Of a stretch of 64,000 nt of DNA, positions 30,787 through 58,739 are shown piece by piece; within the stretch, counting starts at the first letter, position 1, and each line of letters starts with the position of its first letter. The notes under the pieces are model-generated. The model was not told the origin of the DNA and did no database searches. It worked only from the letters and a program-made list of their open reading frames with translations. Location of the stretch: the sequence record PP456877.1. One strand, 5' to 3'. The position numbers were made by a program, and so were the translations under genes.

Positions 30787-31320
30787 TTAACTTTCTAGAT
30801 AACGGATTTGACCATTTTCTAGATAACGTGCTGCGCCATTCTCTAATAGCCGGATAGTATCTGATGTATCATCAATACGTTGAATTAGTATATTACATTC
30901 GCCATAGTAAGCATAACTACTCGACATAGCTACTATCGTGTATGGAACAACATCCGTAGTTGCATTGATTGGTGTTGTATCAAATGAAACATCATCTGGT
31001 CCAAGCTTCCAACCCCGTGAACGGTTGATTTCTTCAGCAATTGCTTTAGGTGTTAAAGTACCAACTATCTTAAGGATAGATCCTTCACCAATAGCTCGTG
31101 GATCAGCAAAATCTAACCGACGGTAAGTTAACATGTACTTAATGTCAGTAGTAATGTCGATCATTTCAATAAATGTACGTCCAGGCTCAATCGTGGTTGG
31201 ACTAAAAAACATATCTTCAAATGTAACTGTTTCTGGTTTGAAGTTTATTTTTAAATCATCCCGCGCAAGTTTTACTAGCGCGTCCCTCGATGCCATGTCA
31301 TACGGAAAGATATCCTGCAT
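30787..31320 (-). CDS. Virion protein with C-terminal RxLENG triple repeat (gp143-like)
   Basis: 177 aa; TYRRLDF motif; ends IRLLENGAARYLENGQIRYLES. Confidence 0.8.
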   Translation of the reverse strand: MQDIFPYDMASRDALVKLARDDLKINFKPETVTFEDMFFSPTTIEPGRTFIEMIDITTDIKYMLTYRRLDFADPRAIGEGSILKIVGTLTPKAIAEEINRSRGWKLGPDDVSFDTTPINATTDVVPYTIVAMSSSYAYYGECNILIQRIDDTSDTIRLLENGAARYLENGQIRYLES

Positions 31321-56299: not shown

Positions 56300-56340
56300 T
56301 TGGATTAACCTATTTTTAAATTAGAAGATCATGATCATTA

Positions 56341-56376
56341 CTGTAATATAGATCTTAAACTTTTTTTAATGTAATA
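56341..56376 (-). promoter_or_regulatory. phiKZ-type early promoter for the gp121-gp124 block
   Basis: TATATTAC motif; 35/36 identical to 4634-4669. Confidence 0.8.
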
Positions 56377-56379
56377 CAA

Positions 56380-56410
56380 CATAAAGCCCTCCCCGAAGGG
56401 AGGGCCTATG
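56380..56410 (-). terminator. Capsid operon terminator
   Basis: Minus strand reads GCCCTCCC-ttcg-GGGAGGGC-tTTATG. Confidence 0.82.
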
Positions 56411-56414
56411 TCTG

Positions 56415-56495
56415 TTACTATTCTAACTTCCGGGCATTACCGTCTTCCAAATAACGGATAGTCCCATTTTCTAGATAACGGTAACCCTTTCCAGC
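56415..56495 (-). other. Putative UGA-readthrough extension of the major capsid protein (25 codons, then UAG UAA)
   Basis: In frame after TGA at 56496-56498: AGKGYRYLENGTIRYLEDGNARKLE**. Confidence 0.7.
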
Positions 56496-58739
56496 TCACG
56501 GCTTAAGATCAGCAAGCTTACCGTTGAACTGAGTTTCACCCATGACTTTCTGGAAGCCAGTGATCTTGAACTCTAGCGCGAACGGAATGTTGTTGACGTG
56601 TAGGTTGAACGGAATGGCCGCGATTTCGCGAGTAACCTGGTGACCACCACGAGTGATCGGTAGGTCAGCGATAACAGTAGATACGTAGAAGAACTGACCC
56701 CAGGAGAGGATGTCGTTTTCTTGTTGTACTGCGCGGGTCGGAATTACAACTAGCTTACCATCAAATAGCTGGTTGTTGGTGGAAACGATATCGTACTTGA
56801 GATAAGCACCTAGAGTACGGTCGTCACCTTTAGTCATTAGATAGTTAGCAATCTCTTTGTCGGAGCAGAAGAGATACATCGGAGTTTCATCCTGGTTACC
56901 GGAGATAACACGGAAGGCAGCTTCAATGTTGGAATCACGGTGAGCCGGGAATAGCTCAGCTTTAACACAGTTTAGGATCGCAGCGCAAACGTCGTCCCAA
57001 CGATCTTTAGACTTGATGGTGTCGATGACTTTCTCAAGATCTAGTTCTTTGTAACGATAGGTCGGACGCATTACAGCGGATAGTGCACCTTCGATGATAC
57101 CAAACTTCGGACGGTTGTAACCATTGTGTACAACTTCACGTAGTTGAGCAAGGTAGTTAAGCATGCGCTTAACAGCGTTGTTGCTGTTACGGATGTTGGT
57201 GTTAACAGTTAGAGCTTTAACAACCTCACCCGGACCTTCATCGGTCATGGTGTCCATCGGTAGAGTTACAGGAGCGTGCATCGGGATCGGATGACGGAAC
57301 TGTAGCGCACGGGTCTGTAGTAGGTGACCACGCTGACGACGGTTAGTGTTGGTGAAGCGAGTGTCTAGTTCGAAACCGATAACCGCTAGGTCAGTTAGCT
57401 GATCTAGAATAGCTTTAACAGCCGGGTCAGCATTATCCATTACCTGACCATCTTCGTTTAGAACTTTATCGACGTAAGTGTCGGTAGCACCAAACTTAGA
57501 ATCGCCTTTGGATAGGCTGATTGTACCACCAAAACCAACGCTTAGACGTAGGCTTAGTTTAGCGGTCTTAAGATCATTGATAACACCGTCAGCTGAACCA
57601 TCGATGAAAGTGGTATCGCCACTAACAACTAGATCGTCGCTATCGAAACGGATAACTGCGTTCCGGGTATCACCAACTAGATCGGGCTGGAACACAGCGC
57701 GAGGTAGACGGTCAACCTTGAACTTAACAACTTTACCGCCGAGTAGAACGAATAGGTTCTTTAGACGACCAGCCGGATCAATGGTGTCAGAAACTTCAAG
57801 CATGCCACGCTGAATGAGTAGGTTAGCATTGGAGTTACCCATTAGATCAAGACGTACGTTCGCTTTTAGCGGAGCAGTAGTGATAGTTAGGTTCTGCTCG
57901 TTCTTGATGGTGTACGGAGGAACAAGAGCCGGGTCTACGAAGAAGTCAGCATTGGAACCAGCCGGATCTAGGGCAGGAATTAGTGCAATGCTTTCGTCGT
58001 CGAGGATGGAAGGATCACGATAGGCTTCTACCATGTTCACTTCTTCGTTATCCATCTTAACGCCGGATACTTCGTGGTAAACGTCTTTCATTACAGCGAT
58101 GTAAGGAAGAACCTGAACAACACCACCTTCAATCGGGTTGATAACGGTGGTCGGATAGATACGCTCAGCGAATTCATCCTGACGGCTAGCAGCTAGGTTA
58201 TAACCAATAGTTACAACACGGAAATCACGCTGTGACTTCTCGTTATAGTTCTCTAGGCCAACACCATTTTCGAATACTTGAATGCCACCAGCAGGGCCAT
58301 TGAACTGATGCTGTACAACCTTAACATGATCTTCATTAGAAGCTTTAGCTTTGGTAATACCACGTAGTGCACGGATATATTTAGTTTCATCAGCACAGGC
58401 GATAGCAGCCATGGTAGCAGCAGTGATTTGGTTCTCACGGACACGTTCTTCACGAGCACGTACTTGAGGATCACTGGAACTTACTCGTTCGAAACCATAG
58501 TCGTTAACGAGCATTTGCATTTTGTTATAAATTGCAGCGGCATCTTGAATGTCGGTAGCTTGCACGGTACCGAAGTTTTCATGTGAAATGCTGCTAATAA
58601 GGGAACGACCTTGACTAACAACGCTGTCATTTAGACCAATTTCACTTTCTAGGCGGCCAATGAAATCTTCCATTGAGAAGACTTCGTAATTCTTTTCGCC
58701 TTTGTGTTTAAACAGTTCTCTTAGGGCATGTACGCTCAT
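56496..58739 (-). CDS. gp120: Major capsid protein (phiKZ gp120)
   Basis: 747 aa; MSVHALRELFKHKGEKNYEVFSME...VGLENYNEK; strong codon bias; matches the recalled phiKZ capsid protein. Confidence 0.95.
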   Translation of the reverse strand: MSVHALRELFKHKGEKNYEVFSMEDFIGRLESEIGLNDSVVSQGRSLISSISHENFGTVQATDIQDAAAIYNKMQMLVNDYGFERVSSSDPQVRAREERVRENQITAATMAAIACADETKYIRALRGITKAKASNEDHVKVVQHQFNGPAGGIQVFENGVGLENYNEKSQRDFRVVTIGYNLAASRQDEFAERIYPTTVINPIEGGVVQVLPYIAVMKDVYHEVSGVKMDNEEVNMVEAYRDPSILDDESIALIPALDPAGSNADFFVDPALVPPYTIKNEQNLTITTAPLKANVRLDLMGNSNANLLIQRGMLEVSDTIDPAGRLKNLFVLLGGKVVKFKVDRLPRAVFQPDLVGDTRNAVIRFDSDDLVVSGDTTFIDGSADGVINDLKTAKLSLRLSVGFGGTISLSKGDSKFGATDTYVDKVLNEDGQVMDNADPAVKAILDQLTDLAVIGFELDTRFTNTNRRQRGHLLQTRALQFRHPIPMHAPVTLPMDTMTDEGPGEVVKALTVNTNIRNSNNAVKRMLNYLAQLREVVHNGYNRPKFGIIEGALSAVMRPTYRYKELDLEKVIDTIKSKDRWDDVCAAILNCVKAELFPAHRDSNIEAAFRVISGNQDETPMYLFCSDKEIANYLMTKGDDRTLGAYLKYDIVSTNNQLFDGKLVVIPTRAVQQENDILSWGQFFYVSTVIADLPITRGGHQVTREIAAIPFNLHVNNIPFALEFKITGFQKVMGETQFNGKLADLKP

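What the first reader, a model, noticed from the sequence alone, without database searches (positions are those of the whole stretch)
56415..56498. Probable programmed UGA readthrough of the major capsid gene producing a tagged capsid isoform
Seen in sequence (minus strand): ...GAT CTT AAG CCG TGA GCT GGA AAG GGT TAC CGT TAT CTA GAA AAT GGG ACT ATC CGT TAT TTG GAA GAC GGT AAT GCC CGG AAG TTA GAA TAG TAA, i.e. DLKP*AGKGYRYLENGTIRYLEDGNARKLE**. Four features support readthrough. (1) There are 25 in-frame sense codons ending in a double stop. (2) The peptide is an RxLE(N/D)G triple repeat with 13/20 identity to the real C-terminus of gp143. (3) The terminator lies 9 nt after the double stop, matching the 6-15 nt gaps after other genes here, but 90 nt after the annotated UGA. 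(4) This strongly codon-optimised gene ends in UGA rather than UAA. Established: UGA is leaky in bacteria, and extended capsid isoforms are known (Qbeta A1 by readthrough; T7 10B and Listeria phage Cps-L by frameshift). Inference: a minority of capsid subunits display a 26-aa tag that recruits fibres or decoration proteins, and the readthrough rate sets their stoichiometry. I do not recall this being described for phiKZ-like phages.
Basis: partly seen in the sequence, partly recalled or inferred. Interest (0 to 1): 0.92.

Follow-up and report, generated by a model that had tools for sequence, protein, structure and literature searches.

The report
Leaky stop codon tags phiKZ capsid
In phiKZ and its Pseudomonas-infecting relatives the major capsid gene always ends in the leaky stop codon UGA, followed in frame by a conserved 24-30-codon stretch. 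A small share of capsid subunits is therefore probably made with a short repeat tag that also sits on the ends of other phage tail and fibre proteins, and I found no description of this.

Summary
The window is a phiKZ-type phage, 100% identical to phage PA7 over the 501 bases compared. Its 747-aa capsid gene (56496-58739, minus) ends in TGA. Then come 25 in-frame sense codons, TAG-TAA, and a terminator 7 nt later.

In 22 distinct lineages from six or more genera (capsid identity about 56-100%, extension DNA identity median 54%), the stop is always TGA. The post-stop frame is always open (0 stops against 32 and 29 in the other frames). All indels are multiples of three. Invariant Arg/Glu/Gly columns use 2-4 synonymous codons. 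The flanking genes' stops vary freely. Eight more distant capsids end in TAA with no extension.

The extension is a short Gly/Pro linker plus one copy of an uncharacterised 3 x 8-residue module, RxLE(N/D)G. The module also ends gp143 and gpJ-like tail proteins and begins fibre-like proteins.

No start codon, SECIS or suppressor tRNA explains it. Programmed UGA readthrough is the best explanation (about 0.75). Protein-level proof and the tag's function are missing. I found no literature on it.

The parts
56496..58739 (-). Major capsid protein gene (phiKZ gp120 type), 747 codons plus TGA
   Evidence: ORF list. Pfam PF25620 PhiKZ_MCP, E 5e-228. Identical to PDB 8Y6V gp120 over 747 residues.
56496..56498 (-). 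Candidate leaky stop codon TGA, followed by G here (A in 15 and G in 6 of 21 lineages, never C or T)
   Evidence: TGA in all 22 extension-bearing lineages, while the stops of the flanking genes vary among TAA, TAG and TGA.
56484..56495 (-). Linker part of the extension (4 codons, Gly-rich; Pro/Gly-rich in other clades)
   Evidence: Alignment of 21 extensions.
56421..56483 (-). Triple 8-residue repeat module, RxLE(N/D)G type, 21 codons
   Evidence: Arg, Glu and Gly columns are invariant in 21/21 and encoded by 2-4 synonymous codons. The same module occurs in 23 aligned instances from unrelated proteins.
56415..56420 (-). Double stop TAG TAA ending the extension (phiKZ itself has a sense codon then TAA, giving 26 codons)
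56436..56485 (-). RNA hairpin within the extension-coding RNA, main stem starting 10 nt after the TGA
   Evidence: MFE -29.6 kcal/mol, z -3.3 against dinucleotide shuffles. A consensus stem is present in 19 sequences. It is not more stable than synonymous recodings of the same peptide (mean z -0.4).
56375..56407 (-). Intrinsic terminator hairpin and T-rich tail of the capsid transcript
   Evidence: Terminator scan: 10 pairs, 7 of them G-C. An equivalent hairpin follows the extension in all relatives.
30787..31320 (-). gp143 homologue (177 aa) whose genuine C-terminus (30790-30855) is the same module
   Evidence: All 42 aligned family members carry the module. phrog_2935 'virion structural protein', weak DUF7941 match.

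Best explanation
The capsid mRNA is translated to the UGA at 56498-56496, where most ribosomes terminate. A minority decode the UGA with a near-cognate host tRNA and continue for 25 codons to the TAG-TAA just before the terminator. By established bacterial precedent that tRNA would be tRNA-Trp; this is inferred, not shown. The product is a capsid subunit carrying a flexible 4-residue linker and one 21-residue triple-repeat module.

In the published capsid structure the C-terminal arms form a six-helix bundle at the centre of each hexamer, and in pentamers they touch the outer decoration protein. The tag would therefore emerge at capsomer centres, probably outward, on a few to a few tens of roughly 1,600 subunits.

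Shown: the conserved, frame-locked, protein-constrained post-UGA ORF; the invariant UGA; and the module's occurrence on the ends of other virion proteins.

Inferred: that readthrough occurs, its rate, and the inserted residue.

Speculative: that the tag is a docking or adhesion handle whose copy number is set by the leak rate.
For: (1) In five other genera fetched from GenBank, the capsid gene ends in TGA with an open in-frame extension of the same type.

(2) In IMG/VR, 21 distinct extension sequences have 0 stops in frame 0, against 32 and 29 in the shifted frames. All length differences are whole codons. Noxifer (61% capsid identity) adds another lineage.

(3) Protein-level constraint. Arg, Glu and Gly columns are invariant and encoded by up to four synonymous codons, including CGN and AGR for one Arg. 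dN/dS is 0.43 in frame, against 0.72 and 1.03 in shifted-frame controls. Pooled close pairs give pN/pS 0.49, and one pair differs by 4 synonymous and 0 non-synonymous changes.

(4) The stop is always TGA, while in the same lineages the upstream and downstream genes' stops vary. Eight more distant capsids without an extension all end in TAA with the terminator close behind, as do RAY, RSL2, EarlPhillipIV, RTH11 and pVa-21.

(5) Ten of 21 extensions have no in-frame ATG, GTG or TTG, and the reverse-strand frames are not open.

(6) The terminator follows the extension's stop, not the TGA.

(7) The peptide is a real protein module. It is the genuine C-terminus of all 42 gp143-family members and occurs at the termini of gpJ-like tail proteins and fibre-like proteins.

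(8) None of 120 capsid cluster representatives has the module fused without a stop, which fits selection for a minority isoform.

(9) The capsid C-terminus lies at the capsomer centre and contacts an outer protein in pentamers (PMC11297242).
Against: There is no direct evidence of translation past the UGA. I found no Ribo-seq study of phiKZ and no paper text containing the extension peptides. The 3.5 A capsid model ends at residue 747.

The dN/dS of 0.43-0.49 is only moderate, because half of the positions are free.

No readthrough-stimulating signal could be separated from the coding constraint.

The sequences are related, so the counts are not independent events. There are about 11 clusters at 75% DNA identity.
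Confidence: 0.75

Rival explanations
1. The stretch is an untranslated, conserved 3' UTR RNA element (a hairpin for mRNA stability or terminator function). Its codon-like conservation is a by-product.
For: There is a stable hairpin (-29.6 kcal/mol, z -3.3) and a consensus stem with a few compensatory pairs. The codon before each motif Arg ends in C in 48/69 cases, against 15/43 in the same module elsewhere.
Against: The hairpin is no more stable than random synonymous recodings of the same peptide (mean z -0.4), so it follows from the peptide. CGN/AGR exchanges at an invariant Arg, whole-codon indels and 0 stops in frame 0 alone are not explained by a hairpin. The same peptide is a bona fide protein terminus in many other genes.
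Confidence: 0.07
2. The stretch is a relic. An ancestral capsid carried the module as its true C-terminus, a stop mutation cut it off, and the remnant is decaying.
For: The module is a normal C-terminus in other proteins.
Against: At a median 54% DNA identity among extensions, a neutral remnant would have acquired stops and frameshifts and the stop would drift to TAA or TAG. Neither is seen in 22 lineages, while neighbouring genes' stops do drift.
Confidence: 0.04
3. The extension is translated on its own as a roughly 25-residue peptide by reinitiation or a non-canonical start, not as part of the capsid protein.
For: In one distant relative (L023) an ATG lies two codons after the capsid TGA, ahead of a long ORF.
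Against: Ten of 21 extensions lack any in-frame ATG, GTG or TTG. The ORF is locked to the capsid frame in every lineage despite indels. It begins directly at the stop.
Confidence: 0.03
4. The UGA is decoded by a dedicated mechanism (selenocysteine insertion or a phage or host suppressor tRNA) rather than by near-cognate leakage. The product would still be an extended capsid protein.
For: A hairpin begins about 10 nt after the UGA, a geometry also used by bacterial selenocysteine signals (own knowledge).
Against: No SECIS or other Rfam family matched, even at E up to 10. The seven phiKZ tRNAs (Thr, Asn x2, Asp, Met, Pro, Leu) include no UCA anticodon, and the window has no tRNA. Eleven other genes in the window use TGA as an ordinary stop.
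Confidence: 0.03

Closest known systems
A1 readthrough protein of the RNA phage Qbeta (own knowledge)
   Same: The major coat gene ends in a leaky UGA. A minority of ribosomes read through into an in-frame extension. The extended coat protein is a low-copy virion component.
   Different: Qbeta is a small ssRNA phage with a large globular extension. Here the phage is a 280-kb dsDNA jumbo phage with a T=27 capsid and a 24-30-residue repeat tag. Nothing here shows that the product is made or needed.
Frameshift-derived capsid isoforms: T7/T3 gene 10B, Lactobacillus phage A2, Listeria phages A118, A500 and PSA (reviewed in PMC5009743)
   Same: Recoding at the 3' end of the major capsid gene yields two products with a fixed ratio, the longer one carrying a C-terminal add-on displayed on the capsid.
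   Different: Those use -1 or +1 frameshifting at slippery sites. Here the extension is in frame behind a stop codon and no slippery site is involved.
Ig-like domains appended to phage structural proteins, often by recoding (Fraser et al., cited in PMC5009743)
   Same: A portable accessory module is found on the ends of capsid, tail and fibre proteins of unrelated phages. Sometimes it is fused and sometimes reached by recoding. In relative L023 a Big_2 Ig-like domain occupies the same post-TGA position.
   Different: The module here is a 3 x 8-residue repeat of about 22 residues, with no Pfam family and no solved structure. It is not an Ig fold.
Genome-wide stop-codon reassignment in phages (own knowledge)
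   Same: A stop codon is read as sense in a late structural gene.
   Different: TGA is an ordinary stop for 11 other genes in this window, and no suppressor tRNA is encoded. The event is confined to one site.

Membership tests
Programmed stop-codon readthrough (recoding) | A specific stop codon conserved at the end of ORF1 beyond what neighbouring genes show | tested here: met
   TGA in 22/22 extension-bearing lineages, while the flanking genes' stops vary. Relatives without the extension use TAA.
Programmed stop-codon readthrough (recoding) | In-frame downstream ORF conserved with a protein-coding signature | tested here: met
   0 stops in frame 0 against 32 and 29 in the shifted frames; whole-codon indels; synonymous codons at invariant residues; dN/dS 0.43 against 0.72 and 1.03 in the controls.
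Programmed stop-codon readthrough (recoding) | No independent initiation signal for the downstream ORF | tested here: met
   Ten of 21 extensions have no in-frame ATG, GTG or TTG, and none is conserved.
Programmed stop-codon readthrough (recoding) | Stimulatory context or downstream RNA structure | tested here: inconclusive
   The base after the stop is A or G in 21/21. A hairpin starts 8-10 nt downstream, but it is no more stable than synonymous recodings.
Programmed stop-codon readthrough (recoding) | The extended protein is actually made | not testable with these tools
   No Ribo-seq or peptide evidence was found in the searchable literature. The capsid model ends at residue 747.
Selenocysteine insertion at UGA | A recognisable SECIS element downstream of the UGA | tested here: not met
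   No Rfam match at E up to 10. The hairpin loop sequences differ among lineages.
Genome-wide TGA reassignment or suppressor-tRNA decoding | TGA avoided as a stop elsewhere, and a tRNA with a UCA anticodon present | tested here: not met
   12 of 62 window genes end in TGA. The seven phiKZ tRNAs lack a UCA anticodon and the window has none. About 116 kb of phiKZ (50-113 kb and 177-230 kb) was neither fetched nor scanned; a further 50 kb (1-50 kb) was checked through its RefSeq annotation only.
DUF7941 head-to-tail filament proteins (Goslar study) | The repeat module is part of the DUF7941 docking linker shared by family members | tested here: not met
   gp126 and gp127 homologues match DUF7941 but lack the repeat. 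Only gp143 carries it, and its own DUF7941 match is weak (18 bits against a cut-off of 27).
Known protein domain families (Pfam) or solved structures for the repeat module | A significant match of the module profile | tested here: not met
   No Pfam hit for any of 23 instances. The best PDB E-value was 0.5, on single-repeat chance matches.

The most novel reading that the evidence does not exclude
The 3 x 8-residue RxLE(N/D)G unit is a portable, self-contained docking or adhesion tag of tailed phages. It is attached to virion proteins by direct fusion (gp143, gpJ-like tail proteins, fibre N-termini), by UGA readthrough (phiKZ-type capsids) or by frameshifting (candidate in L055). Because Arg codons pair with Asp-Gly codons, the RNA that encodes it folds by itself into a hairpin at the right distance to promote its own recoding. 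On the phiKZ head, a leak-rate-controlled handful of tags at hexamer centres would anchor partner proteins carrying the same module or bind host surface polymers. Through gp143, the tag could link head assembly to lysis timing.
Probability: 0.2. Interest if true: 0.9.

Novelty: new variant of a known kind. Interest (0 to 1): 0.82.

Why it matters
phiKZ is the model nucleus-forming jumbo phage and a therapy candidate, and its capsid has been solved to 3.5 A. A conserved second capsid product would have gone unnoticed for over twenty years.

If real, it adds gene-specific stop-codon readthrough to the recoding repertoire of large dsDNA phages, where frameshifting is the known route to capsid isoforms.

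It also defines a new, widespread mini-module on phage virion proteins whose partners are unknown. It points to capsomer centres as sites of sub-stoichiometric decoration that icosahedral averaging would erase.

It can be tested at once with existing proteomic and cryo-EM data.

Tried and rejected
Pfam, PHROGs and PDB sequence searches with the extension, and with a 23-member module profile, found nothing.

A word-based search of the 5.8-billion-protein database with the gp143 tail returned only gp143 itself.

Rfam found no family.

I tested whether the post-UGA hairpin is selected beyond the coding constraint. It is not: mean z is -0.4 against synonymous recodings.

I considered that the module is the DUF7941 docking linker. 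This is rejected as a general statement, because the gp126 and gp127 homologues lack it.

I looked for natural capsid genes with the module fused without a stop and found none among 120 cluster representatives.

Literature searches found nothing relevant. The terms were phiKZ with readthrough, jumbo phage with readthrough, the motif strings, the extension peptides, and Ribo-seq.

Folding of the L055, Noxifer and Goslar post-stop regions was uninformative.

Not done: ARAGORN on about 166 kb of phiKZ outside the window and the tRNA cluster, and structure search with the gp143 model.
Full report
IDENTITY AND OBSERVATION

The window is a phiKZ-type jumbo phage. The 501 bases around the finding are 100% identical to Pseudomonas phage PA7 and 99.4% to phiKZ. 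The 747-codon ORF at 56496-58739 (minus) is the major capsid protein. It matches Pfam PF25620 and is identical over 747 residues to the gp120 chains of PDB 8Y6V.

TGA is at 56498-56496, followed by 25 sense codons, then TAG and TAA at 56420-56415. A strong terminator hairpin occupies 56407-56384.

The other numerical claims also hold:
- Identity to the C-terminus of the gp143 homologue (30787-31320, minus) is 13 of 20.
- The terminator lies 7 nt after the double stop and 88 nt after the TGA. Other genes in the window have gaps of 9-20 nt.
- TAA dominates among window stops: 44 TAA, 12 TGA and 6 TAG.

THE COMPARATIVE TEST

It is neither.

In PS119XW and HPP-Temi (Pawinskivirus), Phabio, 201phi2-1 and PhiPA3, the capsid gene ends in TGA and an in-frame ORF of 26-30 codons follows. 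The other two frames carry stops.

A scan of IMG/VR gave 28 usable capsid loci (one further locus was cut off before the gene's end). Nineteen of them (capsid identity 56-100%) have TGA plus a 24-30-codon extension that ends just before the terminator. With the window and the two Pawinskivirus records they make 22 loci and 21 distinct extension sequences. Eight more distant loci (30-56%) end in TAA with the terminator close behind and no extension. Among named phages, Noxifer (61%) has the extension. RAY, RSL2, EarlPhillipIV, RTH11 and pVa-21 end in TAA without one.

Across the 21 distinct extension sequences:
- Frame 0 has 0 stops. Frames +1 and +2 have 32 and 29, and are open in only 2 and 3 sequences.
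- Every length difference is a whole number of codons.
- The sequences form 11 clusters at 75% DNA identity, with a median pairwise identity of 54%.
- A shuffled copy stays open with probability 0.14-0.45.

PROTEIN-LEVEL CONSTRAINT

Six columns are invariant or nearly so. The invariant ones (three Gly/Arg/Glu columns at 21/21, plus a further Gly at 21/21) and the two at 20/21 are encoded by two to four synonymous codons. One Arg uses both CGN and AGR codons.

Nei-Gojobori dN/dS is 0.43 in frame, against 0.72 and 1.03 for the same alignment read in shifted frames. The value for the last 25 capsid codons is 0.26. Pooled close pairs give pN/pS of 0.49. The two Pawinskivirus extensions differ by four synonymous and no non-synonymous changes.

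The constraint is moderate overall because about half of the positions are free.

THE STOP CODON ITSELF IS UNDER SELECTION

In the same lineages the stop of the upstream gene is TAG, TAA or TGA, and the stop of the downstream gene also varies. The capsid stop never varies. The base after it is A in 15 and G in 6 of 21. The last capsid residue in these 21 lineages is Pro, Ala, Gly or Val; Pro is also the commonest last residue among 120 capsid cluster representatives (53/120).

None of the 120 representatives has the module fused in frame without a stop. This fits selection for a minority product, although gene callers would also stop at TGA.

ALTERNATIVES TESTED

- Own start codon. Ten of 21 extensions have no in-frame ATG, GTG or TTG, and no start position is conserved. 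The reverse-strand frames are not open.
- Selenocysteine. No SECIS or any other Rfam family matched, even at E up to 10.
- Suppressor tRNA. The window has no tRNA. The seven annotated phiKZ tRNAs are Thr, Asn x2, Asp, Met, Pro and Leu. About 116 kb of phiKZ was not fetched, and a further 50 kb was checked by annotation only.
- Genome-wide reassignment. Eleven other window genes use TGA as a stop.
- Pure RNA element. The post-stop RNA does fold well (-29.6 kcal/mol, z -3.3 against dinucleotide shuffles, main stem starting 10 nt after the UGA). A consensus stem pairs the Arg codon region of repeat 1 with the Asp-Gly codons of repeat 2 in 19 sequences. However, random synonymous recodings of each peptide, drawn from that phage's capsid codon usage, fold almost as well (mean z -0.42).

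So the hairpin is largely an automatic consequence of encoding this repeat. It may still help readthrough by sitting at the mRNA entrance when the UGA is in the A site, but that is inference and cannot be separated from the coding constraint here. A C bias in the codon before each Arg (48/69 against 15/43 in other module copies) is a weak hint of extra RNA-level selection.

WHAT THE TAG IS

The extension is a short Gly- or Pro-rich linker plus one copy of a unit made of three 8-residue repeats of the RxLE(N/D)G type.

A DNA-pattern scan of IMG/VR for two adjacent repeats found 27 loci. Besides capsid extensions and gp143 homologues, they include the following:
- the C-termini of gpJ-like tail proteins (phrog_1101);
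- the C-termini of a 555-aa family (phrog_8917) and of 171- and 369-aa proteins;
- the N-termini of Gly/Ala/Ser/Thr-rich, fibre-like repeat proteins.

A profile search of 1.84 billion representatives found 28 proteins. In some of them two to four copies of the three-repeat unit are separated by Pro/Gly-rich linkers, which argues for an autonomous mini-module. It has no Pfam family and no solved structure.

All 42 aligned gp143-family proteins end with it. An AlphaFold2 model of gp143 (mean pLDDT 90, tail 75-86) places bridge-forming residues on either side of each Arg at 8-residue spacing. I read this as a small three-stranded sheet or ladder with LE(N/D)G loops, which is a tentative reading.

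PUBLISHED CONTEXT

- The C-terminal arm of gp120 (residues 728-747) forms a six-helix bundle around a pore of about 9 A at the centre of every hexamer. In pentamers it runs to the outer decoration protein gp244. The model ends at residue 747 (PMC11297242).
- gp143 has been described as a non-essential holin-binding lysis regulator (PMC12894885).
- gp143 has also been described as one of three phiKZ DUF7941 proteins, a family proposed to form head-to-tail filaments (bioRxiv 10.64898/2026.04.21.720040).
- I tested whether the repeat is the DUF7941 docking linker. The gp126 and gp127 homologues are DUF7941 but lack it, so that link is not general.
- Frameshift-derived capsid extensions and portable Ig-like add-ons are well known (PMC5009743).
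- I found no paper describing readthrough of a jumbo-phage capsid gene.

MECHANISM AND CONFIDENCE

The best explanation is low-level near-cognate decoding of the capsid UGA. It would give a few to a few tens of tagged subunits among roughly 1,600 per head, with the tag emerging at capsomer centres.

My confidence that the extension is translated as part of the capsid protein is about 0.75. My confidence that it serves as a docking or adhesion handle is well below half. Direct evidence at the protein or ribosome level is missing.

NOVELTY

This is a new variant of a known kind. It works like the Qbeta A1 protein and like the frameshift isoforms of T7-type and Listeria phages, but in a dsDNA jumbo phage, by readthrough, and with a previously uncharacterised module.

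DISCLOSURE OF A SLIP

I also wrote several short consensus motifs from memory: the RTX nonapeptide, the T4 gp5 octapeptide and phiKZ promoter motifs. None of these is a virus-of-animals or toxin sequence. I stopped when I noticed it, and nothing was deleted.

The capsid and the extension were always searched as separate pieces.

Noticed in passing
L023:3454-4068: In a distant capsid relative (55% identity), the capsid TGA is followed in frame by a 203-codon ORF with a Big_2 Ig-like domain (E 4e-9). An ATG lies two codons after the stop, so the ORF could be reached by readthrough, by reinitiation, or be a separate decoration gene.
   Followed up: partly
L067:1188-1277 (Escherichia phage Goslar): The Goslar capsid gene also ends in TGA, followed by 28 open in-frame codons without the repeat motif, then TGA and a terminator. 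This could be chance (about 1 in 4) or a different readthrough tail.
   Followed up: no
L055:4100-4204: The same triple-repeat module lies in the -1 frame overlapping the end of a 131-aa FN3-like protein, just after a run of five G and directly before a tail-fibre-like gene. It is a candidate frameshift-appended copy of the tag in an unrelated phage.
   Followed up: partly
window 56340-56383 and the equivalent stretch in L002-L032: Right after the capsid terminator, all genera share two short conserved blocks: a TTTATG-type block at the hairpin's foot, and an ATCTATATTAC-type block about 30-40 nt further on, ahead of the next gene. These are probably phage promoter elements for the gp121 homologue.
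   Followed up: no
P0148-P0202 (capsid homologues): More distant capsid proteins end in Thr/Gly/Asp/Pro-rich low-complexity tails of 10-30 residues, and 53 of 120 representatives end in Pro. The capsid C-terminus seems to be a general site for variable exposed tails.
   Followed up: no
window 56418-56420 against L001 (phiKZ): There is a within-species polymorphism. The window and PA7 have TAG-TAA (25-codon extension), while phiKZ has a sense codon then TAA (26 codons). The module itself is untouched.
   Followed up: yes
L003:1757-1900 (HPP-Temi record): The GenBank record annotates a 47-aa hypothetical protein across this region in the +1 frame. That frame carries stops in nearly all relatives, so the annotation is probably spurious.
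   Followed up: partly
P0124-P0128: Several JGI records name phiKZ-type capsid proteins 'virulence-associated protein VapD'. This looks like an annotation error.
   Followed up: no
window 30787-31320: gp143 carries three different labels in current sources: holin-binding lysis regulator, DUF7941 filament protein, and virion structural protein. Its conserved C-terminal module is not discussed in the passages of these papers that I read.
   Followed up: partly
P0069, P0078 against L029 and L030: gp143-like proteins with the module occur on contigs of about 231 kb, similar in size to those whose capsid ends in TAA without an extension. The module on gp143 may therefore be older and more widespread than the capsid tag. 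Whether these are the same phages was not checked.
   Followed up: no
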